IMG/VR virus record: IMGVR_UViG_3300020202_000001
Coordinates: 160,419 to 224,418 of that record
Length of the DNA: 64,000 nt
Reading direction: 5' to 3' (one strand)
The notes under the pieces are model-generated. The model searched no databases. It was not told where the DNA came from and was given only the letters and a program-made list of their open reading frames with translations. Positions 3,867 through 24,388 of this stretch are shown piece by piece (position 1 is the first letter of the stretch; every line of letters starts with the position of its first letter). Position numbers and translations under genes: made by a program.

Positions 3867-4397
3867 GTGCGAGAACTAACTGTCAGGATCAGGTTCACGA
3901 AGCACTGCCTCGGCAGGGTGCTTGACCGGTCGGCGGCGGACGGGCGAATGGTCTTCGCCCGCACCCCGGACGCCCACGTCATGTTCCCCGCGAGCTGGCA
4001 TGCCTCGAACATGGTCCTCGCGGCGAAGTTGCTCGGGCGGCATCAGGGCTCGGTACGCAAGATCCTCTGGGACCCCGAAGTGGACTGCGTGACCCGGCCC
4101 GACCGGTGGTTCAAGCGGTACTACACCGGCAGGGACAACAAGCGACGCTTCGCGGTACACGAGGCGTTCTTCCCCGGCCAGGTGGTGGGCCTGAACTGTG
4201 CGGTCCCGTCCGAGGTGTCCGACGACGACCTCGTGCAGCTGATGAACATCGCCGGCCGGTACAAGGGCCTGAGCCCGTGGGACCCCGGCGAGTACGGACA
4301 GTTCCAGGTGGAGTCGATCGCGTTGCGACGAGGGCCGGCAATCCCTCCCGCCGCGACACAGAAGGAGAGCGAACAACAGTCAAACGTCAGCGCATAA
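3867..4397 (+). CDS. stand-alone RAMP (Cas7/Csm3-like) protein
   Basis: LTVRIRFTKHCLG (beta1), VMFPAS, HEAFFPGQ, C-terminal G-rich loop AGRYKGLSPWDPGEYGQFQV. Confidence 0.6.
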   Translation: MRELTVRIRFTKHCLGRVLDRSAADGRMVFARTPDAHVMFPASWHASNMVLAAKLLGRHQGSVRKILWDPEVDCVTRPDRWFKRYYTGRDNKRRFAVHEAFFPGQVVGLNCAVPSEVSDDDLVQLMNIAGRYKGLSPWDPGEYGQFQVESIALRRGPAIPPAATQKESEQQSNVSA

Positions 4398-4425
4398 AGA
4401 AGGCCTTCGACCGGCATCGAAGGCC
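4394..4425 (-). terminator. intrinsic terminator on the minus strand
   Basis: perfect 9-bp stem ggccttcga/tcgaaggcc (4402-4410/4417-4425) followed by ttctttat on the minus strand. Confidence 0.65.
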
Positions 4426-4482
4426 CTCTCGTTCTAGGAGGTAGCTACCCCTGCGGGCGTCCACCGAAGGTTTCCAACGCCC
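4394..4482 (-). ncRNA. candidate small RNA of about 85 nt
   Basis: bounded by a minus-strand promoter and terminator; internal hairpins; contains anti-Shine-Dalgarno ctcctag; no ORF. Confidence 0.45.
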
Positions 4483-4484
4483 AC

Positions 4485-4513
4485 ATCATAGCGCCCTCCT
4501 GAACGCAATGCAA
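4485..4513 (-). promoter_or_regulatory. sigma70-type promoter on the minus strand
   Basis: TTGCAT (4513-4508)-17 bp-TATGAT (4490-4485). Confidence 0.6.
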
Positions 4514-4585
4514 TACGAGTCAAGCCCCCGCGTGCGCGAAAAACGCCGTGCCGGGTCTCCGCGTCCAGGTTGAGGGCACTACGCA

Positions 4586-6130
4586 ATGGCAGAAAAACCG
4601 CAGATAACGCTGCTCAAGAGCGGCAACCGGCTGGTCGTCGCCCCTACCCCGACGCAGGTCAGGGAGGTGCTCGAAACGAAGCTGAGCTTCACCGCGAAGC
4701 ACATGCTCTACGGTGCCGAGCGGTTCGAGGAAGGCAACAAGGGCAAGCGGTTAGAGCTGATCGACTACCAGTGCTACTTCCTCGATCACAAGAACCGCAT
4801 CGCGACCAGCCTCGGCTTTTACCACCGCATCACCAAGGCCCTGAAGGCCCGCGGCTACCCGGTCAGGATTAAGGACCTGACGCCCCCGGCAAAGCCTGAG
4901 ATCTTCGTCCCCCGCTGGAACCGCGTTCTCGGCCCCGACTCCGGCATCAAGCTGCGGCACGGGCAGAAGGAGTTCCTGGAGTGGTTCGTCGCCCAGGTGC
5001 AGGCCGGGCTCCCCGGCCGCGCCGACGCCCCGCCCGGCTACGGCAAGAGCTTCCTGATCGGCCTCGCGGCCATGCTCTTCCCGAAGGCCAAGATCCACTA
5101 CACGTCCAAGCGGGCCAGCGTCATGCGGGACCGCATCTTCCCCGAGCTGTGCGGGATGCTCCCCGACGTCGGCCTGGTCGGCGGCGGGGTGCGGAAGGCC
5201 GGCTGTCGCGTGCAGGGGTACACGTTCGACTCGCTCCACCACAGCGACGGCAAGTGCGACATCCTCTTCACCGACGAGTGCCACGAGGCGGCGGCGGACG
5301 ACGCGGCCGAGCAGCTGGCGAAGTACGACGAGAGCCTGAACTACGGGTTCAGCGCCACGCAGGACATGCGGATCGACAACAAGGACCTCCGCGTCGAGGC
5401 CATGTTCGGGCCGGTCGGCTACAAGATGACGTACCAGACCGCCGTGAAGCACGGGCTCGTCGTGCCGCTCGAAGTGCGGTGGCGGAACGTGCGGATGGAC
5501 ATGGACCCGTGCGAGGGGATCGAGGACTCGGTCGAGCGTAAGCGGTGGGGCATCTGGCGGAACCGCCACCGCAACCAGCTGATCGCCAAGGACGCGCGGA
5601 GCCACCCGGACCAGCAGGTGCTCGTCACCTGCGAGACGATCGAGCACGCGCTGGCCCTGAAGCGCGAGATGCCCGAGTTCACGCTCGTGTACGCCGCGCG
5701 GGACATCTCGTTCGAGAAGCGACGCTACTTCCGCAAGCTGGGCCTGTGGCCGAAGAAGGGCCTCAAGCAGATGACGGAGGAGCGCAAGCAGAAGCTCACC
5801 CGCCTGTTCGAGCGGGGCAAGCTGCGGAAGGTGATCGTCACGACCGTCTGGAACGTCGGCGTGTCGATGAACCACCTCGAAGTCCTGGTGCGGGCCGACG
5901 CCGGCGGCAGCCCGATCATGGACACGCAGATCCCCGGCCGCGTCAGCCGCACGAACAAGGCGATCGGCAAGAAGCAGGGCGTCATCTACGACTACAAGGA
6001 CCAGTTCAACTCCGGCTTCAAACGGAAGAGCGGCAGCCGCCGCTCCAGCTACGTCGGCAACGGCTGGACCCAGGTCGACCCAGGCACGAAACCCGGCGAG
6101 AAACTGCAGCACCGGCTGTGGGAGGATTGA
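4586..6130 (+). CDS. superfamily 2 DNA helicase (UvsW/XPB-like)
   Basis: Walker A APPGYGKS, DECH, motif III SAT, motif VI QIPGRVSR. Confidence 0.88.
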   Translation: MAEKPQITLLKSGNRLVVAPTPTQVREVLETKLSFTAKHMLYGAERFEEGNKGKRLELIDYQCYFLDHKNRIATSLGFYHRITKALKARGYPVRIKDLTPPAKPEIFVPRWNRVLGPDSGIKLRHGQKEFLEWFVAQVQAGLPGRADAPPGYGKSFLIGLAAMLFPKAKIHYTSKRASVMRDRIFPELCGMLPDVGLVGGGVRKAGCRVQGYTFDSLHHSDGKCDILFTDECHEAAADDAAEQLAKYDESLNYGFSATQDMRIDNKDLRVEAMFGPVGYKMTYQTAVKHGLVVPLEVRWRNVRMDMDPCEGIEDSVERKRWGIWRNRHRNQLIAKDARSHPDQQVLVTCETIEHALALKREMPEFTLVYAARDISFEKRRYFRKLGLWPKKGLKQMTEERKQKLTRLFERGKLRKVIVTTVWNVGVSMNHLEVLVRADAGGSPIMDTQIPGRVSRTNKAIGKKQGVIYDYKDQFNSGFKRKSGSRRSSYVGNGWTQVDPGTKPGEKLQHRLWED

Positions 6131-6133
6131 CCC

Positions 6134-6952
6134 GTGGAGGCAACCTTGAAACGACGCAGGCGGGCCGGCGGCGCTGACCGCGGCCTGGAACAACTGGCGA
6201 CGCTGCTGCTGCGCACCTGGCAGGTGGAGCTGCAGCGTTACCTGAGCATGGGCCGCGAGCCCGACGACGTCGCCGACCCCGACGACGTCGTCCGCCACCT
6301 GACCGACACGTCGGGGGCGAGGCGGCAGCGGCGGATCGACAACCTGACGGAGAACATCGAGCTGGCCCCGGCCCGCGCCCGGGTCGACCGGTCGACGAGC
6401 CTGTGGATGGACGTCGCCCGGATCGTGGTGCGGAACCGGTTCGACCCGGAGCGGTTCGTGCGGCGGCAGTTCGCCGTGCTGTCGCCCCGGATGCCGACCG
6501 AGAAGCGCAGCCGGCTCCCGCAGCCGGAAATGCTCAAGAGCGAGCGGGCGATCAAGAACTACAAGGCCGGGCACGGCGTCTCGATCACTGAGATCCAGGC
6601 CGCCTTCAAGTCGCAGCTCTCCCGGTTCAAGGTGCAGGTCGCGGTCCTCGGGCAGTCGCGGTTCTACAACCTCGACAGCGAGGGGACGTGGATCGCGGTG
6701 CTGACCAACGAGGAGGAGCCGCTGTCGGCGCTGTTCCGGTACTGCACCGCCCGCCGCATCCTCAAGCAGGCGGGGCTCAAGCAGCGGGCGAAGTTCAAGG
6801 AGATCGCGGCCACCTACCGGACGGCGGCGGCGATCCAGTACGTCTTCGAGGCGGACGAGTACGACGAGATCTGGAAGGACCACCTGCCCGAGGGCTGGTC
6901 CGAGAAGGCCCAACGTATCTACCGCAGCTTTTACGGCTTCAACGACGAGTGA
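6134..6952 (+). CDS. hypothetical replication-module protein
   Basis: 272-aa ORF with high GC3 between the two helicases; function not recognised. Confidence 0.7.
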   Translation: MEATLKRRRRAGGADRGLEQLATLLLRTWQVELQRYLSMGREPDDVADPDDVVRHLTDTSGARRQRRIDNLTENIELAPARARVDRSTSLWMDVARIVVRNRFDPERFVRRQFAVLSPRMPTEKRSRLPQPEMLKSERAIKNYKAGHGVSITEIQAAFKSQLSRFKVQVAVLGQSRFYNLDSEGTWIAVLTNEEEPLSALFRYCTARRILKQAGLKQRAKFKEIAATYRTAAAIQYVFEADEYDEIWKDHLPEGWSEKAQRIYRSFYGFNDE

Positions 6953-6966
6953 AGGAGCACGCGACC

Positions 6967-8643
6967 ATGCCCAAGCAGAGCGACAAGAAGAAGCGGAAAG
7001 AGGGTCAGTTCGAGGACATGAAGCGGCGGCCGGCGCTCGACCAGCGGAAGAAGGAGCTGATGATGGCCGTCCTCCTCCGCAACGAGGACGCCTTCAAGGC
7101 CACCCGGGAGATCCTCAAGCCCGAGCACTTCGGGGAGTTCGACCGCGGGTACAAGGTCGCGTGGGCGTTGGCCAACGAGTTCTACGACGAGCACGAGGCC
7201 CTGCCCGGCTTCGAGTTCCTGATGGCGGAGATCGAGGGGGCCAGCGAGGCCAACCCGAACCTGTTCAACGACGCCGAGTACGACAAGCTCTCGTCGTTCA
7301 TCGAGTACGCGTTCGACAAGGACAGCTTCGAGGCGGACATCACCCAGGACCGCGCCAGCGCGGACTGGGGCATCAAGACGGCGAAGAAGTTTCTCGACGA
7401 GCGGCTCGCCGCCAAGATGAAGGAGGTCATCCAGTCCAAGGACATGCTCCCGGCGAACCTGCCGGAGTTCATGAACCAGATGGCCGCCGAGGCGGAGCAG
7501 ATCGCGTCCGTCTCTACCGAGGTCGACTTCGACCCGTTCCCCGACGACTGGCACAAGACCGCCAGCATCAAGGTCTTCTCCACCGGCATCCCGTTCTTCG
7601 ACGAGTTCCTCGGCGGCGGCCACGCGCCGGGCGAGGTGTACGGGCTGATGGGGCCGTACGGGTCGTGCAAGACGACGATCGCGTCGATGCTGATCGTCGA
7701 GGCGGCCAAGGCGTTCTACCAGGAGCACCTGCTCGACCCGAGCCAGCCGCCCAAGCTGGCCGTGATCGCCTGCTACGAGGCCCGCAAGCCGGAAATGCGG
7801 AACCGGACGCTCGGGTACGCCGCGATGATCCGCCGGGCGACGATGGAGGCGATGGCCCCGGACAAGCCGCTGGAGCTGGCCGGGTTCTCGACCTCCGACA
7901 AGCTGAAGAAGTACGAGAAGCGGATCTGGCGGGCGAAGATCAACAACGGCGAGAAGGTGGCCGGGGAGCTGGAACGCGTCATGGACGCGCTGACCTACCT
8001 CCGCCGGCACATGGTCGTGCTGGACATGACCGGCCACGAGACGAAGGGCGTGGGCAACGGCGGGATCAAGGAGGTCTCGCAGATGATCTCCAACGTCTGC
8101 CGCCAGCGGAAGGCCAAGTGCGGCCTGTTCGTGATGGACTACGTCGGCGCGATGGTGAAGCGGTACATGGGCGGCAACGACGTCGAGACGAGCGAGCTGC
8201 GGCACCTGATCGGCGGGGCTCCCCTGACGATCAAGAGCCAGATCGGCGACGTGTTCGACTGCCCCTCGTACGCCCTCCACCAGCTCGCCGGCGAGGCCAA
8301 CAGCTTCGGGTCGGCCGTCCTGGCCGACCACACGAACGCGGCGGAGTCGAAGAGCTTCGCGGAGAACCTCGACTTCAGCTTCTCGATCAGCAAGCCGCAG
8401 GACCCCGACGCGGTCGCGCTGTTCGGCTGCACGAAGCACCGCCGCCAGCCGGGGCGGATGAACACGATCATCAAGATCGACGGCGGGCTCAATCGCGTGT
8501 TGTCGGCCGACGACAAGTACATGATTAACACCCACGCCCGGAAGATCATGCTGATCGCCGACGTCAACAAGCTGCCCGAGAACTCGGCGATCAAGAAGAA
8601 CAGCGCCGCGGCCGGCGGCGGGTCGGCGTCCAGCCTGGACTAG
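6967..8643 (+). CDS. DnaB-like replicative helicase
   Basis: ATG 6967; N-terminal helical domain (LKPEHF), Walker A GPYGSCKT, Walker B FVMDYV, HQL motif, TKHR arginine-finger region. Confidence 0.8.
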   Translation: MPKQSDKKKRKEGQFEDMKRRPALDQRKKELMMAVLLRNEDAFKATREILKPEHFGEFDRGYKVAWALANEFYDEHEALPGFEFLMAEIEGASEANPNLFNDAEYDKLSSFIEYAFDKDSFEADITQDRASADWGIKTAKKFLDERLAAKMKEVIQSKDMLPANLPEFMNQMAAEAEQIASVSTEVDFDPFPDDWHKTASIKVFSTGIPFFDEFLGGGHAPGEVYGLMGPYGSCKTTIASMLIVEAAKAFYQEHLLDPSQPPKLAVIACYEARKPEMRNRTLGYAAMIRRATMEAMAPDKPLELAGFSTSDKLKKYEKRIWRAKINNGEKVAGELERVMDALTYLRRHMVVLDMTGHETKGVGNGGIKEVSQMISNVCRQRKAKCGLFVMDYVGAMVKRYMGGNDVETSELRHLIGGAPLTIKSQIGDVFDCPSYALHQLAGEANSFGSAVLADHTNAAESKSFAENLDFSFSISKPQDPDAVALFGCTKHRRQPGRMNTIIKIDGGLNRVLSADDKYMINTHARKIMLIADVNKLPENSAIKKNSAAAGGGSASSLD

Positions 8644-8648
8644 GAACT

Positions 8649-9716
8649 ATGTCGGAACCCCTGAACCCAGCGCTCTACCGCAACCTGAAGAGGGTCTTCG
8701 GCAAGGTGGTGATCTCGAACGAGGGCGTCGCCTTCGTCGGTCGCTACGTGCCGAAGATCGTCGAGGAGGGCGAGGAACTCTACATCGAGAACTCGGGCGA
8801 GTATTACCGGGTGAACTGCAACAAGTGCAGCGACACCCGGCACCGCCTGTACATCAACCACCGGTGGGCGAAGCGGGACGAGAAGGGCCGGCGGAACCTG
8901 TGGATGGCCGTCTGCTACAACGACCCCACCTGCTACTCCGACCAGGAATCCCGCGAGGAGCTGTACAACCGGCTGAGCGAGATCCGGGGCGTGCTGGAGG
9001 AGGCGAAGATCAAGCAGGGCGTCGTCCGCAAGGAGGCGTCGATCGTCGACCCGCCCGGCCCGATCATCACGCTCGACAAGCTGCCGCCGAACCACCCCGC
9101 CAACGTCTACCTCGCCGACCGGTACTTCGACCCCGAGCTGCTCGGGCGGACGTACGGCGTCGGGCTGGTGACGAACTCGATGTACTACCTCGCCCGCGAC
9201 CGCATCTACTTCCCGATCGTCCAGGACGGGAAGCTGCGGGGCTGGCAGTGCCGGTACGCCGGGGAGCTGGACTGGAAGGACAAGTCCAACCCGCCGAAGA
9301 GCTTCAACTGCCCGGACATGATGCGGGGCCACCTGCTGTACGGCCTCGACCAGGCGAAGCGCTACCAGACCGGGGTCCTCGTCGAGGGGCCGACGTCGCG
9401 GCTCAACTTCGGGCCGATGGCGATGGCCTCGCTCGGGTTCCCGATCACGAACAACCAGTCCCGCTTGGTCGTGCCGCACTTCAAGGACCACTCGATGGTC
9501 ATGCTGTTCGACCCCGACGTGCTGGAGAGCCCGTCGATGAAGCGGAAGTACGACCAGGTGTACGACGAGCTGAAGGACCAGTTTCGACACGGGCTCGCGG
9601 CGGTCGCGCTGCCCAAGCCTTACGACCCGGCCGACCTCGATCGGTACTGGGTCCGGGAGTACGTCCGCCGCGAGGCCAAGGCCCAAGGGGTCAAGGTGCG
9701 GTGGGAGAAACGGTGA
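8649..9716 (+). CDS. DnaG-type primase
   Basis: N-terminal Zn motif (CNKC...H...C), IYFPI...GWQCR, Toprim VEGP and FDPD; directly after the helicase. Confidence 0.82.
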   Translation: MSEPLNPALYRNLKRVFGKVVISNEGVAFVGRYVPKIVEEGEELYIENSGEYYRVNCNKCSDTRHRLYINHRWAKRDEKGRRNLWMAVCYNDPTCYSDQESREELYNRLSEIRGVLEEAKIKQGVVRKEASIVDPPGPIITLDKLPPNHPANVYLADRYFDPELLGRTYGVGLVTNSMYYLARDRIYFPIVQDGKLRGWQCRYAGELDWKDKSNPPKSFNCPDMMRGHLLYGLDQAKRYQTGVLVEGPTSRLNFGPMAMASLGFPITNNQSRLVVPHFKDHSMVMLFDPDVLESPSMKRKYDQVYDELKDQFRHGLAAVALPKPYDPADLDRYWVREYVRREAKAQGVKVRWEKR

Positions 9717-14528: not shown

Positions 14529-14599
14529 GCGACCACTCAATCCGGGTCCCCGAAGGTTCCCCAGTGGTCGAGAGAAACCAGTTCTAGGAGACAGATCCC

Positions 14600-16753
14600 A
14601 TGGCTCGAAACCGAGGCCTCAAGCCCCGCTCCAGCGGGCAGTACGACAACCGTTCCCACGGCCGGCGCGAGGGCGGCGGCCCGCCGGACGACCGGACGAT
14701 CAACACCCAGGTGGCCCGCGTGAACCTGGTGCGTGCGCGGTGGAAGGAGGGGCCGCTGATCGCCCGCCCGTGGCCGGCGCTGGGGTACGAGGACCCGACG
14801 CAGCTCGTGCCGGGCCGCAAGCACATCGACAGCCACGGCCAGAACCACTGGATCGTGCGTGCCCCGGTGGCGAAGTACATCGGCATCCACGAGCACTTCA
14901 CCTTCATCCTCTACAAGCCGTGGGAGGTGGAGACGAACCCGGAGGTCAAGAAGAACAACCCGTACCTCGTGCTCTACCGCGCGGCGAAGGCGGCCCTCAA
15001 GGCCGGCAACTTCGGCCCCGGGCGGAAGTGGGACGCGGACTGGAACAAGCTGATGCCGACGATCGGCGGCGACGACACGGGCGGTGCCCCGATGTCCAAC
15101 CCGAACGCGGTCGGCTTCTTCCAGGGCGAGATCTACGCCAACGGCGACAAGGACTACATCGGCAACGACCGCACCCTGCCGCTCGGCGCGGCGGACGGCG
15201 ACGACCTGCAGGTGGTCCAGATCGCCGGGGCCGCGTTCGACCGGCTGCTCGATCTGCTCGACACGCCCAAGCCGGACGCGGAGGGTGACGAGGAGAAGGA
15301 GCCCTGGAAGTTCTTCAAGTTCGGCGACCCGACCGGCGTCCCGCAGGAGGACGGCAGCGTCGAGGGCGGCAAGTTCATCTACGTCTTCAACCCCAAGCGG
15401 GCGAAGGTGAAGGACGGCGACAAGGGCAAGATCGTCACCGTGGGCGGGCAGAGCTTCATGCTCAGCCGGTCCAGCTGGGAGGGCAAGATCAGCCAGACCC
15501 AGGGGTACGAGACGGCCCTGGCCAGCGTGTTCAAGAGCGAGGACGGGACGAAGTTCACGCCCGACCTCGACAACGACCGGGCCGAGCGCGTCCGCGACAC
15601 GTTCCAGTTCTGGTGGGACGACGAGGAGAGCGGGCAGAAGGGCCTGCTCAAGGTCCCCTCGATCGAGGAGCAGTGCGTGCTGATCGCCCGCGCGTTCCAG
15701 GACGTCCCCAAGCTGCTGACGTATGCCTGGGGCGACCACGACGAGTTCCTGTCCGGCGAGGTGCAGGACATCCTCAAGCAGAAGCGCACGGCGGCCATGC
15801 CGGGCGACGACGACGAGCGTGACGCCGCCCGCGGCGACGACGACGACGATGACGTGGAGGGCGACGACGACGACGACGCGCCGAAGGCGGGCAAGAAGGT
15901 CCGCACCGACCCCACGCAGAAGACCGGCAAGAAGAAGCCGGCCGACGACGAGGACGACGACACGGACGGCGACGACGATGACGACGCCGACGAGAAGCCG
16001 GCCGCCGGCAAGAAGGGCGACAAGAAGAAGCCCGCCAAGAAGGACGATGACGAGGACGACGACGCCGACGACGACACGGACGCGGAGAACGCGGACGATG
16101 ACGACGCCGGCGACGACGACGATGACGCCGACGACACGGACGACACCGGCGACGACGAGGACGAGGCCGAGGGCGAAGCCGAGGCGGGCGACGACGACGA
16201 TGACGCCGACGACTCGGACGACGACGAGGCCGGTGACGATGACGACGACACCGACGAGGACGCTGGCGACGACGACGACGCTGACGACACCGACGACGAT
16301 GACGCCGGTGACGACGACGACGACGACGCGGACGCGCCCAAGCCCGGCAAGAAGGGCGACAAGAAGCCGGCGGGCAAGGCCGACAAGAAGCCGGCCGGCA
16401 AGAAGGACGACGACGACGAGAACGCCGGCTACTTCGCCGAGGGCGACGACGACAAGAAGCCCGCGGGCAAGAAGGGCGACAAGAAGCCGGCCGCGAAGAA
16501 GGACGACGACGACGACGCGGACGATGACGACGCCGGCGACGACGCCGACGACGACAAGACCGCGTCGATGAAGAAGTCCACGGACGCCGCCCGCGACCGC
16601 GCGGGCAAGCGTGCCAACCTGCCGCCCGACAAGAAGGGCGACGGGAAGAAGCCCGCCGCCGACAAGAAGCCGGCCGACAAGCCGGCGGACAAGAAGGCGG
16701 ACAAGAAGCCGGCGGATAAGCCCGCCGCCGGCAAGACCGGCAAGAAGAAGTAG
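14600..16753 (+). CDS. probable ssDNA-binding protein with very long Asp-rich and Lys-rich tail
   Basis: about 400-aa aromatic-rich globular N-terminus followed by about 300 aa of D-rich and KKPA repeats; sits between tmk and recA. SSB call is inference. Confidence 0.5.
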   Translation: MARNRGLKPRSSGQYDNRSHGRREGGGPPDDRTINTQVARVNLVRARWKEGPLIARPWPALGYEDPTQLVPGRKHIDSHGQNHWIVRAPVAKYIGIHEHFTFILYKPWEVETNPEVKKNNPYLVLYRAAKAALKAGNFGPGRKWDADWNKLMPTIGGDDTGGAPMSNPNAVGFFQGEIYANGDKDYIGNDRTLPLGAADGDDLQVVQIAGAAFDRLLDLLDTPKPDAEGDEEKEPWKFFKFGDPTGVPQEDGSVEGGKFIYVFNPKRAKVKDGDKGKIVTVGGQSFMLSRSSWEGKISQTQGYETALASVFKSEDGTKFTPDLDNDRAERVRDTFQFWWDDEESGQKGLLKVPSIEEQCVLIARAFQDVPKLLTYAWGDHDEFLSGEVQDILKQKRTAAMPGDDDERDAARGDDDDDDVEGDDDDDAPKAGKKVRTDPTQKTGKKKPADDEDDDTDGDDDDDADEKPAAGKKGDKKKPAKKDDDEDDDADDDTDAENADDDDAGDDDDDADDTDDTGDDEDEAEGEAEAGDDDDDADDSDDDEAGDDDDDTDEDAGDDDDADDTDDDDAGDDDDDDADAPKPGKKGDKKPAGKADKKPAGKKDDDDENAGYFAEGDDDKKPAGKKGDKKPAAKKDDDDDADDDDAGDDADDDKTASMKKSTDAARDRAGKRANLPPDKKGDGKKPAADKKPADKPADKKADKKPADKPAAGKTGKKK
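15826..16753 (+). repeat. low-complexity gac/gat and aagaagccg(gcc) coding repeats
   Basis: poly-Asp runs and recurring GKKGDKKPA / DKKPA units. Confidence 0.85.
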
Positions 16754-23191: not shown

Positions 23192-23981
23192 CACGTTCGA
23201 CATCTTCGTCAACGATCTCTACGAGCTACTGCCCAAGACGATCAACTACGACACCGTGTACGCCTCGGTCGAGGACCTGGCGGGCACCAAGCTGACCTCG
23301 GACGTGCTCCGGCAGGTGTGCTGGCGGCTGGCCGGCAACCTCGGGCGGATGGCCGAGCAGACGCCCGTGCCGACCTGGACCCGCCAGCCGTTCCCGGAGT
23401 GGGTGCCCGCGCAGATCGCGTCCGCCAAGCGGCGGCTGAGCGGCAAGGGCGACCTCGGGTACGTCTACACGATCCAGGTGCTGGCCGGGCTCTCCGCCGG
23501 CCTGAAGACGACGAAGTTCTGGACCGACAAACAGGTCCGCTACATGGCCGGCGACTTCGGGTTCGCACGCCGCCGGCCGAGCGAGCGGTCGACGCAGCTG
23601 CCCCGCAACCAGTTCCAGAGCCCGATGGAGCTGGTCACGTTACGCCTCACGCTCCTGATCGACCCCAAGCTGTGCACGCCGGCCGAGCCCGGGTTCGAGA
23701 AGACGAAGATCTCCTCGGCCAACCTGGACTGGAACCGGGAGCAGATGAAGTACCGCGACCGGTACGACCCGGGCTACCAGTGCCCGCAGGGCGTCACCCA
23801 CCAGGTGCCGTGCTGCCGGTGCCCGTTCGGGATCAGCACCTGCCGGGCGGCCGTGCACCCGACCGACTACGAGTTCGACTACTGCGAGCAATGTGGCCGC
23901 GACCGCGCCCCCTACGACACGTCCGTGTCGAAGGAGATGTGCGTCGAGTGCTACGAGCGAAAGATCCTCCAGAGGAGGTAG
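23064..23981 (+). CDS. hypothetical protein with Cys-rich (Zn-binding) C-terminus
   Basis: CP...CCRCP...C...CEQC...CVEC. Confidence 0.75.
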   Translation: MSSPEEPIKGSERTYPVNQIIDNWKRWRATLAKTYLDQTPRGDTFDIFVNDLYELLPKTINYDTVYASVEDLAGTKLTSDVLRQVCWRLAGNLGRMAEQTPVPTWTRQPFPEWVPAQIASAKRRLSGKGDLGYVYTIQVLAGLSAGLKTTKFWTDKQVRYMAGDFGFARRRPSERSTQLPRNQFQSPMELVTLRLTLLIDPKLCTPAEPGFEKTKISSANLDWNREQMKYRDRYDPGYQCPQGVTHQVPCCRCPFGISTCRAAVHPTDYEFDYCEQCGRDRAPYDTSVSKEMCVECYERKILQRR

Positions 23982-23983
23982 CG

Positions 23984-24388
23984 TTGCCGGAAGACTTGAG
24001 CTGGATGAGCCGGCCGCTGGAAGAGGGCGAGTTCGAGACGGGTTGCCACACCCACCAGGGTAACGACCTGATCCTGTTCGCCCAGACGACGAGAGAGCTG
24101 CACGACCGCCGGTACACGATCTTCGGGACCGTGTACGGCAGGCACCGCACCGAGCCCGACTTCGACTGGGTGGAGGCGCTGCGAGCACCGATCAAGGAGC
24201 TGTTCCGTGAAACGACACGCAAGTACCGCCGCGAGGTCCGGGAAGACCCCGGCGGCGACGTCTACACCTACCCCGACTTCTTCAACTGCTGCATCCGCGA
24301 CTACCTCCGGTGGATCGAGGACTACGGCCACGACGCCGGCCCAGCCCCAGCCGGACACGAGCATCCCCGACTCCGCCACGCCTGCTGA
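23984..24388 (+). CDS. hypothetical protein
   Basis: TTG start after RBS gaggagg; high GC3. Confidence 0.65.
   Translation: MPEDLSWMSRPLEEGEFETGCHTHQGNDLILFAQTTRELHDRRYTIFGTVYGRHRTEPDFDWVEALRAPIKELFRETTRKYRREVREDPGGDVYTYPDFFNCCIRDYLRWIEDYGHDAGPAPAGHEHPRLRHAC

What the first reader, a model, noticed from the sequence alone, without database searches (positions are those of the whole stretch)
4394..4513. Only minus-strand transcription unit seen: a small RNA of about 85 nt
Seen: TTGCAT-17-TATGAT on the minus strand points into a non-coding stretch that ends at a perfect 9-bp hairpin whose U-tract (ttcttt) is on the minus strand only. The stretch holds further stems (gggcgt/acgccc; ggtagctacc palindrome) and an anti-SD word. 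In a window where every CDS is on the + strand, a dedicated antisense unit is unlikely to be accidental. It converges on the RAMP gene end.
Basis: partly seen in the sequence, partly recalled or inferred. Interest (0 to 1): 0.68.

Follow-up and report, generated by a model that had tools for sequence, protein, structure and literature searches.

The report
Conserved antisense small RNA beside phage RAMP gene
The stretch most likely is a real small-RNA gene (about 85 nt, read against the flow of all neighbouring genes) that is kept at the same spot next to a CRISPR-like RAMP gene in dozens of related uncultivated giant phages, and whose exposed part matches the ribosome-binding sites of the phage's own DNA-replication genes, so it probably tunes when those genes are translated.

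Summary
In this genome alone the promoter and terminator words are no more than chance would give. The case rests on comparison.

- **Conservation:** the same unit sits in at least 56 of about 64 distinct related loci. It has a minus-strand sigma-70-type promoter, a 60-135 nt body, a covarying hairpin and a U-tract. It always lies between the same two + strand genes.
- **Strand:** wobble pairs in the terminator helix number 43 G-U against 3 A-C, so the RNA is read from the minus strand.
- **Not a canonical vrRNA:** the RNA has no pentamer repeats and no hypervariable part.
- **Target in relatives:** in 12 of 15 representative relatives the RNA body has at least 9 nt of sense-strand complementarity to the ribosome-binding region of the DnaB-like helicase gene 2.3 kb downstream. 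The match co-varies (p below 5e-5).
- **Target in the window:** this copy has diverged. Its linker CUCCUAGAAC matches the ribosome-binding sites of three other genes, one of them an NrdB-like ribonucleotide reductase subunit.

Best reading: a new family of trans-acting phage sRNA, possibly working with the RAMP. No RNA-seq run was listed, so expression is untested.

The parts
4508..4513 (-). -35 hexamer TTGCAT of the small-RNA promoter
   Evidence: A TTGnnn word 16-18 nt upstream of TAnnnT is kept at this position in relatives.
4485..4490 (-). -10 hexamer TATGAT, 17-nt spacer from the -35
   Evidence: Relatives carry TAGAAT, TAAAAT, TATAGT, TATGAT or TACTAT at the same place. The flanking word GGCGCTAWGATGTG is shared with L009.
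4394..4482 (-). Predicted small RNA, about 81-89 nt. The start near 4478-4482 and the 3' end in the U-tract at 4394-4398 are inferred, not mapped.
   Evidence: Both covariance models built from relatives place their best local hit here on the minus strand, weakly (9.6 and 8.2 bits).
4455..4482 (-). 5' hairpin P1 (GGGCGU/ACGCCC closing a CC-UUCG-GG tip). It ends in CCCGC, as in relatives.
   Evidence: The stem sequence differs between clades but stays paired (GCGGG/CCCGC, UGGUUCC/GGAACCA, GGCUU/AAGCC).
4430..4454 (-). Single-stranded linker, the presumed seed. It holds GCUAC, the anti-SD CCUCCU and CUCCUAGAAC.
   Evidence: CUCCUAGAAC is complementary to GTTCTAGGAG, which is the ribosome-binding site of three genes.
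4398..4429 (-). Terminator hairpin (perfect core 4402-4425). On the minus strand it extends to 14 pairs with 2 G-U pairs.
   Evidence: In relatives 9 of 11 pairs carry double-sided changes and 0 of 500 shuffles reach the observed score. G-U against A-C is 43 to 3.
4394..4401 (-). U-tract UUCUUUAU. It overlaps the RAMP stop codon (4395-4397).
   Evidence: In A+T-richer relatives this is a run of 5-9 U on the minus strand, seen as an A-run directly after the RAMP stop on the + strand.
3867..4397 (+). RAMP gene (176 aa, Cas7/Csm3-like fold, Vipr-like G-loop). The small RNA converges on its end.
4586..6130 (+). SF2 DNA helicase gene. Its start lies back-to-back with the small-RNA promoter.
   Evidence: It follows the RAMP gene in nearly all relatives where the contig reaches far enough.
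6950..6969 (+). Junction of gene X stop and the DnaB-like gene start. This is the conserved target site of the RNA family in relatives. In this window only the SD AGGAG (6953-6957) matches the RNA.
14581..14590 (+). GTTCTAGGAG, ribosome-binding site of the gene at 14600-16753. Candidate trans target of the window's RNA.
23973..23982 (+). AGGAGGTAGC, ribosome-binding site of the gene starting at 23984. It is complementary to GCUACCUCCU of the RNA. Weaker candidate target.

Best explanation
Window 4394-4513 (minus strand) most likely holds a genuine, independently transcribed small-RNA gene of about 85 nt. The sequence shows a host-type (sigma-70-like) promoter, a 5' hairpin, a C/A-rich single-stranded linker and an intrinsic terminator whose U-tract ends on the stop codon of the RAMP gene.

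The gene sits antisense inside a + strand replication operon (SbcC-like, RAMP, helicase, gene X, DnaB-like, primase). It defines a new RNA family kept at this spot in an uncultivated jumbo-phage lineage.

Inferred mechanism: the exposed loop and linker pair with ribosome-binding regions of the phage's own mRNAs and so change translation initiation or mRNA stability. Occlusion of the SD makes repression the more likely direction.
- In most relatives the target is the DnaB-like replicative helicase mRNA.
- In this phage the seed has drifted. It matches the GUUCUAGGAG ribosome-binding sites of an NrdB-like ribonucleotide reductase gene, a small basic ORF after the NrdA-like gene, and the gene at window 14600.

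Shown: the anatomy, the conservation, the strand and the complementarity. Inferred: expression, the RNA ends, the direction of regulation and any protein partner.
For: - **Same unit in relatives.** 42 loci pass a strict promoter-plus-perfect-hairpin-plus-T-tail rule. Eleven more pass by eye with one stem mismatch or a TTTACA -35. Three of the four closest relatives also carry it.
- **Terminator covariation.** All 12 pairs carry compensatory changes across 41 sequences. In one clade 9 of 11 pairs do, with 97% of cells paired and 0 of 500 shuffles as high.
- **Strand.** G-U against A-C within the helix is 43 to 3, found with a strand-symmetric search. The minus-strand fold is 16 kcal/mol better than the + strand fold.
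- **Non-coding.** The only overlapping ORF has GC3 of 0.61, against 0.86-0.98 for real genes.
- **Target enrichment in relatives.** Complementary 8-mers at the gene X/DnaB junction number 31, against 2.2 expected. In a slightly wider window 41 lie on the sense strand and 0 on the antisense strand, while elsewhere the split is 93 to 106.
- **Target covariation.** The longest perfect match is 9-14 nt in 12 of 15 representatives and lies next to or over the SD or start codon. Each RNA matches its own junction better than other phages' junctions: own mean 8.93 against cross mean 6.73, permutation p below 5e-5.
- **Window copy.** GTTCTAGGAG occurs 4 times on the + strand and never on the minus strand: once at the RNA locus and three times 7-11 nt before an ATG. 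Four called genes have a perfect 10-nt match to the RNA in their initiation region, against 0.32 in shuffles (p about 0.007). One is an NrdB-like gene.
- **Operon context.** The phage's own 25-copy intergenic motif AAAACCGGTTTT brackets the replication module, with copies 1.3 kb before the window start and at window 10257, and is absent from this spacer. This fits + strand read-through of the locus.
Against: - No expression data exist. No RNA run was listed, and the phage is uncultivated.
- In this genome alone the promoter and terminator words are within chance.
- The window's RNA lacks the family's CACACC motif. Models built from relatives recognise it only weakly (E 0.03-0.07 in a 1.4-kb search, nothing in the 64-kb search).
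- The window's RNA has only a 5-6 nt SD/anti-SD match to its own DnaB-like gene.
- The nearest large-contig relative, L009, shows no significant target anywhere in its genome.
- The 5' hairpin is only moderately stable: mean z is -1.3 across the family and -0.5 in the window.
- Complementarity between two DNA sites could also mean a shared DNA operator rather than RNA pairing.
Confidence: 0.6

Rival explanations
1. The RNA is the partner of the adjacent Vipr-like RAMP protein. RAMP subunits load on the RNA and the complex binds complementary nucleic acid, such as the DnaB-like or NrdB-like initiation region as mRNA or as DNA. This would be a VIPR-like system that uses a fixed, contiguous seed in place of pentamer repeats and regulates the phage's own replication genes. 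It overlaps with the best explanation and differs only in requiring the RAMP.
For: - The RAMP has a Cas7/Csm3 fold.
- Its C-terminal helix, G-loop and last strand match the SUSP1-clade Vipr profile (hhalign 91.6%, E 8e-7). SUSP1 Vipr is the only PDB sequence hit.
- VIPR systems pair a RAMP of about 20 kDa with RNAs of about 100 nt encoded in the spacers flanking the gene. Some types have a single RNA, and some carry helicase or nuclease accessory genes (bioRxiv 10.64898/2026.04.26.720920).
- Here the RNA abuts the RAMP stop codon in nearly all relatives and a helicase gene follows.
- A GCCAY/GCUAC-like word recurs about three times in exposed positions of many family members, as read by eye.
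Against: - The defining vrRNA feature is absent. The whole genome has no run of 5 or more YNNGG units. Lag-5 periodicity is missing on both strands (0.66 and 1.13, against 1.65 in the SUSP1 control).
- The RNA is conserved, not hypervariable.
- It is antisense to the RAMP gene, whereas the SUSP1 vrRNAs lie on the gene strand.
- All junction matches are on the sense strand. VIPR targets are reported on both strands.
- RAMP genes exist without the unit: L010 (98% complete genome, no hit to model R1), L119/L120, L041, L070 and L075.
- Adjacency cannot be told apart from general synteny of the replication module.
Confidence: 0.3
2. The unit acts only in cis, in the manner of lambda OOP. A bidirectional terminator ends RAMP-operon transcripts, and a convergent promoter interferes with read-through into the helicase gene. 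Its transcript may also pair with read-through mRNA or the RAMP 3' end and trigger cleavage.
For: - The hairpin sits 1 nt after the RAMP stop.
- In many relatives the terminator lies 9-60 nt inside the RAMP coding end, so those RNAs are true antisense RNAs.
- No phage intergenic motif separates the RAMP and helicase genes, so read-through is plausible.
Against: - A purely cis antisense RNA needs no conserved sequence. Yet loop and linker words (AACACACC, CCGCUACAC, GCCAC) are kept across G+C of 39-70%.
- These words co-vary with a site 2.3 kb away.
- In the window the overlap with the RAMP gene is only the stop codon.
Confidence: 0.15
3. In this particular phage the unit is a decaying relic or a chance look-alike. 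Only the hairpin works, as the terminator of the RAMP operon.
For: - The window copy lacks the CACACC motif and the DnaB match.
- Covariance models score it at under 10 bits.
- The -35 word matches 3 of 6 consensus positions.
- The closest relative by RAMP identity (L119/L120, 67%) has lost the unit.
Against: - The hexamers, the 17-nt spacing, the P1 stem, the terminator and the U-tract are all intact.
- The G-U pairs favour the minus strand in this copy too.
- The seed matches several ribosome-binding sites (p about 0.007).
Confidence: 0.07
4. The conserved structure belongs to the + strand, as a 3' UTR of the RAMP mRNA or a 5' leader of the helicase mRNA.
For: The + strand also folds better than shuffles (z -4.2), and + strand transcription probably crosses the region.
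Against: - Wobble pairs are 43 to 3 in favour of the minus strand.
- The promoter and the U-tract are on the minus strand in all relatives.
- The 201-nt + strand region as a whole has z of only -2.2.
- No Rfam family matches on either strand.
Confidence: 0.03

Closest known systems
Trans-acting phage-encoded base-pairing sRNAs, e.g. lambda LPR1/PreS, which enhances translation initiation of host dnaN (bioRxiv 10.1101/2024.10.31.621285)
   Same: A small phage RNA that acts by base pairing at a translation-initiation region of a replication gene.
   Different: - The predicted targets here are the phage's own genes (DnaB-like helicase, NrdB-like reductase), not host genes.
- No sequence or Rfam relation was found.
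- The direction of regulation and any chaperone are unknown.
- The RNA belongs to an uncultivated jumbo-phage lineage.
VIPR systems: a phage RAMP (Vipr) with vrRNAs (bioRxiv 10.64898/2026.04.26.720920)
   Same: A phage-encoded RAMP of about 20 kDa with a Vipr-like G-loop and no CRISPR array. A non-coding RNA of about 85-100 nt lies in the flanking spacer and ends in a structured 3' hairpin. A helicase gene lies next door.
   Different: - The RNA has no YNNGG (or NNNGG/YNNNG) pentamer tract.
- Its sequence is conserved rather than hypervariable.
- It is antisense to the RAMP gene.
- Complementarity is contiguous and limited to the sense strand, at ribosome-binding sites of the phage's own genes.
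- The locus sits inside a core replication module rather than an accessory island.
Lambda OOP RNA. The comparison rests on established knowledge of lambda, not on a test run here.
   Same: A short RNA read against the main operon from a promoter just upstream of the replication genes. It ends at an intrinsic terminator at or inside the 3' end of the preceding gene.
   Different: OOP acts in cis on cII mRNA. This family keeps sequence words that co-vary with a distant site, and the window copy overlaps the upstream gene only at its stop codon.
crRNA of type III CRISPR-Cas bound by Csm3/Cmr4
   Different: - No repeat-spacer array is present.
- No other cas-like gene was recognised among the neighbouring genes scanned against Pfam, PHROGs and NCBIfam.
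- The RNA has its own promoter and terminator.

Membership tests
Independently transcribed bacterial/phage sRNA gene | Own promoter upstream of the RNA | tested here: met
   TTGCAT-17-TATGAT lies at 4513-4485. Equivalent hexamers with 16-18 nt spacing occur at the same position in at least 56 of about 64 distinct relatives. It is sequence evidence only.
Independently transcribed bacterial/phage sRNA gene | Intrinsic terminator (G+C-rich hairpin plus U-tract) on the RNA strand | tested here: met
   Covariation. G-U against A-C is 43 to 3.
Independently transcribed bacterial/phage sRNA gene | A discrete transcript is detected | not testable with these tools
   No RNA run was listed for this sequence.
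Trans-acting base-pairing sRNA | An exposed seed complementary to target mRNAs, kept through co-variation | tested here: met
   Relatives. Window copy, with different targets: 10-11 nt matches to ribosome-binding sites, p about 0.007. Regulation itself was not tested.
Any Rfam family | Score at or above the family's gathering threshold | tested here: not met
   The best hit is 18.9 bits to the terminator part of RF02867, whose gathering score is 48.
vrRNA of VIPR systems | Encoded in the spacer flanking a Vipr-type RAMP gene, about 100 nt long | tested here: met
vrRNA of VIPR systems | 9-16 tandem YNNGG (or related) pentamer units | tested here: not met
   No run of 5 or more YNNGG units exists in the 224-kb genome, and the related patterns are at or below shuffle level. 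There is no lag-5 periodicity on either strand, against 1.65 in the SUSP1 control.
vrRNA of VIPR systems | Hypervariable guide positions between close relatives | tested here: not met
   The loops and the linker are the most conserved parts.
vrRNA of VIPR systems | The RNA co-purifies with the RAMP | not testable with these tools
   This needs a pull-down. The complex-prediction tool takes no RNA.
Vipr / RAMP protein (the neighbouring gene) | Sequence relation to Vipr proper | tested here: inconclusive
   hhalign against the SUSP1-clade profile gives 91.6% probability and E 8e-7, but over 40 columns only (helix, G-loop, last strand). The hmmsearch hit to PDB SUSP1 Vipr has E 0.67. The paper's type assignments were not available.
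Lambda OOP-type cis-antisense RNA | Substantial antisense overlap with the 3' end of the upstream gene | tested here: inconclusive
   In the window only the stop codon overlaps. In the relatives where the hairpin reaches into the gene it ends 9-60 nt inside the coding end.

The most novel reading that the evidence does not exclude
The RAMP and this RNA form a non-canonical relative of VIPR. A Cas7/Vipr-like protein would load on a fixed, structured RNA that has no pentamer repeats. The complex would recognise a contiguous sequence at the ribosome-binding sites of the phage's own replication and nucleotide-metabolism genes. That would make it an RNA-guided RAMP used for viral self-regulation rather than for defence or warfare between phages.
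Probability: 0.25. Interest if true: 0.85.

Novelty: new member of a known kind. Interest (0 to 1): 0.62.

Why it matters
Small RNAs of lytic and jumbo phages are little studied, and most characterised phage sRNAs act on host genes. This is a family found by sequence comparison alone. Its gene is fixed in the replication module of an uncultivated jumbo-phage lineage. Its seed co-varies with the ribosome-binding region of the phage's own replicative helicase, which yields a concrete and testable RNA-target pair.

The gene also abuts a Vipr/Cas7-like RAMP gene. If the two work together, RNA-guided RAMP systems would extend beyond pentamer-repeat guides and beyond defence. If they do not, the locus shows that a small RNA next to a phage RAMP gene cannot be assumed to be its guide.

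Tried and rejected
- **Rfam.** Only sub-threshold terminator-like hits on either strand.
- **Cultured phages.** DNA and protein searches found no relative of the RAMP and only about 25% identical helicases. No annotated genome helps.
- **RNA-seq.** None was listed.
- **vrRNA reading.** Rejected on pentamer and periodicity tests, with SUSP1 as positive control.
- **RNAduplex scan along 9.5-kb loci.** Too noisy in G+C-rich sequence: energies of -30 to -50 kcal/mol everywhere, and the junction only sometimes on top. It was replaced by exact-match statistics.
- **Covariance models.** R1 and R2 found other clades at the right place and strand but not the window copy in large searches. Local searches gave only weak hits there.
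- **15-nt site at G000:110574-110588.** This is the best genome-wide match of the window RNA (about 0.03 expected for uniform bases; my estimate). The gene after it has no homologue in three related genomes, so conservation cannot be tested. It stays a lead only.
- **Whole genome of relative L009.** The longest match is 13 nt, which is chance level, and initiation regions show no enrichment.
- **Relocated copy in L010's genome.** None was found with R1, whose reach is limited.
- **Apparent minus-strand genes.** High-GC3 minus ORFs at window 30-34 kb are antisense shadows with GC1 below GC2.
- **** was a mistyped query and returned nothing.
- **Complex prediction** was not used, because it cannot take RNA.
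Full report
**Setting**

The window is the last 64 kb of a 224,418-bp IMG/VR virus record with direct terminal repeats. Its G+C is 65-75%. The finding lies in the 188-nt spacer between two + strand genes: a 176-aa gene (3867-4397) and an SF2 helicase gene (4586-6130).

The neighbourhood is a replication and recombination module:
- an SbcC-like ATPase (658-2829)
- a 319-aa gene
- the 176-aa gene
- the helicase
- a 272-aa 'gene X' (6134-6952)
- a DnaB-like helicase (6967-8643)
- a primase (8649-9716)

No cultured phage in GenBank is close.

**Observation**

- TTGCAT (4513-4508), a 17-nt spacer and TATGAT (4490-4485) lie on the minus strand.
- A perfect 9-bp hairpin occupies 4402-4425.
- UUCUUUAU follows the hairpin on the minus strand only.
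- The gggcgt/acgccc stem, the ggtagctacc palindrome and the anti-SD word are all there.

The minus strand folds at -60.4 kcal/mol (z -7.0). The + strand of the same span folds at -44.6. On the minus strand the terminator extends to 14 pairs through two G-U pairs, which would be C-A mismatches on the + strand.

Taken alone, these words are not beyond chance.
- The consensus scanner did not flag the site.
- Genome-wide shuffles give as many promoter-like words as the real genome.
- Shuffles give about 0.6 promoter-plus-terminator units, against 2 observed.

The only overlapping ORF (4434-4586, minus) has non-coding codon statistics. Codon-position G+C also shows that the apparent minus-strand ORFs elsewhere in the window are shadows of + strand genes.

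**Comparative evidence**

The 176-aa protein has 99 relatives in metagenomes. Seventy-nine related loci were fetched in two collection scans. Three of the four closest relatives added new loci by contig look-up; the fourth duplicated one already held. Wherever the contig reaches far enough, the helicase gene nearly always follows.

In 42 distinct loci a strict rule finds the same layout on the minus strand. The rule asks for TTGnnn, 16-18 nt, TAnnnT, a 60-135 nt body, a perfect hairpin of 6 or more pairs (most found have 9-17) and a T-rich tail. Fourteen more loci show it with one stem mismatch, a TTTACA -35 or by later look-up. The relatives span 39-70% G+C. In the A+T-richer ones the U-tract is an unambiguous run of 5-9 U on the minus strand.

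The terminator stem covaries.
- All 12 pairs carry compensatory changes across 41 sequences.
- Within one clade 9 of 11 pairs do, with 97% of cells paired and none of 500 shuffles as high.
- A strand-symmetric count inside this helix gives 43 G-U against 3 A-C. The folded molecule is therefore the minus-strand RNA.

Covariance models built from one clade find the other clades at the same place and strand.

The 5' hairpin changes sequence between clades while staying paired. Its thermodynamic signal is modest, with a mean z of -1.3.

Exposed words are conserved:
- AACACACC in the P1 loop
- CCGCUACAC or CCGCCAC in the linker
- UUCGCCAC or UGCCACAC in the terminator loop

The window's RNA is a diverged member.
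- It keeps the promoter, the P1 ending in CCCGC, a GCUAC word and the terminator.
- It lacks CACACC.
- The models score it weakly and only in a local search (9.6 and 8.2 bits).
- Three of its four closest relatives (RAMP identity 61-64%) keep both the unit and CACACC. The closest (67%) has lost the unit.

**The neighbouring gene is a RAMP**

- An AlphaFold model built from 32 sequences has pLDDT 91.8.
- Foldseek returns 105 PDB hits at E<=1e-3. The top ones are all Csm3, Cmr4, type VII Cas7 or Cas7-11 domains.
- By sequence, Pfam, PHROGs and NCBIfam are blank.

A 2026 preprint describes VIPR systems (bioRxiv 10.64898/2026.04.26.720920). These are phage RAMPs (Vipr) of about 20 kDa. Their RNAs (vrRNAs) are about 100 nt long, lie in the flanking spacers and consist of 9-16 YNNGG pentamers plus a structured tail.

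I located the SUSP1 locus and saw its pentamer arrays. I then built a SUSP1-clade Vipr profile.
- hhalign between that profile and the window's RAMP family gives 91.6% probability (E 8e-7). The match covers the last helix, the G-loop and the last strand.
- The only PDB sequence hit of the family profile is 'SUSP1 Vipr protein' (E 0.67).

The RAMP is therefore a distant Vipr relative.

The RNA fails the defining vrRNA tests.
- The genome has no pentamer run.
- There is no lag-5 periodicity, against 1.65 in the SUSP1 control.
- There is no hypervariable part.

The window has no CRISPR-like array.

**A conserved distant target**

A scan for sequences complementary to each RNA body turned up a recurrent site about 2.3 kb downstream, always on the + strand. 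With longer flanks the site resolves to the junction between the end of gene X and the start of the DnaB-like gene. Examples:

| Locus | RNA segment | mRNA segment | Position |
|---|---|---|---|
| L017 | CGCGUGAAAUACAC | GUGUAUUUCACGCG | directly 5' of the SD |
| L006 | UCUGUUUCAC | GUGAAACAGA | -10 to -1 |
| L011, L026 | AACACACCG | CGGUGUGUU | just before the start |
| L016 | AUACACACC | GGUGUGUAU | upstream of the start |
| L005 | CAGCACACC | GGUGUGCUG | upstream of the start |
| L003 | CACACCU | AGGUGUG | on the SD |
| one clade (L013, L015, L018, L019) | CCGCUACAC | GUGUAGCGG | about 70 nt upstream |

The statistics are as follows.
- Complementary 8-mers in the junction window number 31, against 2.2 expected.
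- In a slightly wider window 41 hits lie on the sense strand and none on the antisense strand. Elsewhere the strands are balanced, 93 to 106.
- Each RNA matches its own junction better than other phages' junctions (8.93 against 6.73 nt; permutation p below 5e-5).

Lineage-specific matched segments fit RNA pairing better than a shared protein operator. The sense-only bias fits an mRNA target.

**The window's own RNA**

It has only the 5-nt SD/anti-SD match at its DnaB-like gene. Its linker CUCCUAGAAC(G) is, however, perfectly complementary to GTTCTAGGAG. That word occurs four times on the + strand of the genome and never on the minus strand. One copy is at the RNA locus itself. The other three lie 7-11 nt before an ATG:
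- an NrdB-like ribonucleotide reductase small subunit with an ATP-cone (genome 14515)
- a small ORF directly after the NrdA-like gene
- the 717-aa gene at window 14600

Two further initiation regions have 10-nt matches. Overall four called genes have such a match, against 0.32 in shuffles (p about 0.007). The seed seems to have moved to other replication-linked genes. This step is the least secure part of the argument.

**Mechanism and rivals**

The best-supported reading has three parts.
- Host RNA polymerase transcribes the RNA from a sigma-70-type promoter embedded antisense in a long + strand operon. The phage's own 25-copy AAAACCGGTTTT motif brackets the module and is absent from this spacer.
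- The RNA's exposed C/A-rich loop and linker pair with ribosome-binding regions of phage replication and nucleotide-metabolism mRNAs.
- Translation initiation changes as a result, and repression is the simplest outcome.

The RAMP may serve as its chaperone or effector. I put this at about 0.3. Five or more RAMP-bearing relatives lack the unit, and every vrRNA-specific feature failed.

A purely cis role like that of lambda OOP does not explain the conserved, co-varying words. A + strand element is contradicted by the wobble bias. A relic in this one phage cannot be excluded.

**Limits**

- No expression data exist, and the RNA ends are inferred.
- The relatives are phylogenetically related, so the counts are not independent events.
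- Gene starts at the junction were placed by homology and SD heuristics.
- The Vipr type assignments of the preprint were not available.

Noticed in passing
window 10257, 19485, 25216, 37709, 44419, 49353, 54166; 18 more copies elsewhere in G000: The A+T-rich palindrome AAAACCGGTTTT occurs 25 times in a 68% G+C genome. The copies inspected lie in gene spacers. Often it appears as TCCAAAAACCGGTTTTGAGAAGGAG just before a start codon. It is likely the phage's own promoter, operator or terminator signal that marks out operons.
   Followed up: partly
L107:1218-2037 (G000:110217-111039): The coding signal (GC3) switches frame at about 110630, where a new ATG with SD GGAGG begins. The upstream frame stays open until 110828, so this is either an overlap or a frameshift. 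The same stretch holds a 15-nt perfect complement (110574-110588) to the small RNA, just downstream of an ATP-dependent DNA ligase gene.
   Followed up: partly
window 15901-16752: The C-terminal third of the 717-aa protein (14600-16753) is a low-complexity repeat rich in Lys, Asp, Ala and Pro codons. This gene is one of the candidate targets of the small RNA, and no family matches it.
   Followed up: no
L067:2040-2471: In one relative about 430 nt, including an 84-aa ORF, are inserted between the RAMP stop and the small-RNA terminator. The RNA unit stays next to the helicase start.
   Followed up: no
L082:27620-28000 (Escherichia phage SUSP1, KT454805): The published vrRNA arrays of SUSP1 are plainly visible as GGY-NN pentamer tracts, each followed by a hairpin tail. 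The tail carries GGGUAG...GCUACA words that resemble the GGGGUAGCUACC of the window RNA. The resemblance was not tested and may be coincidence.
   Followed up: no
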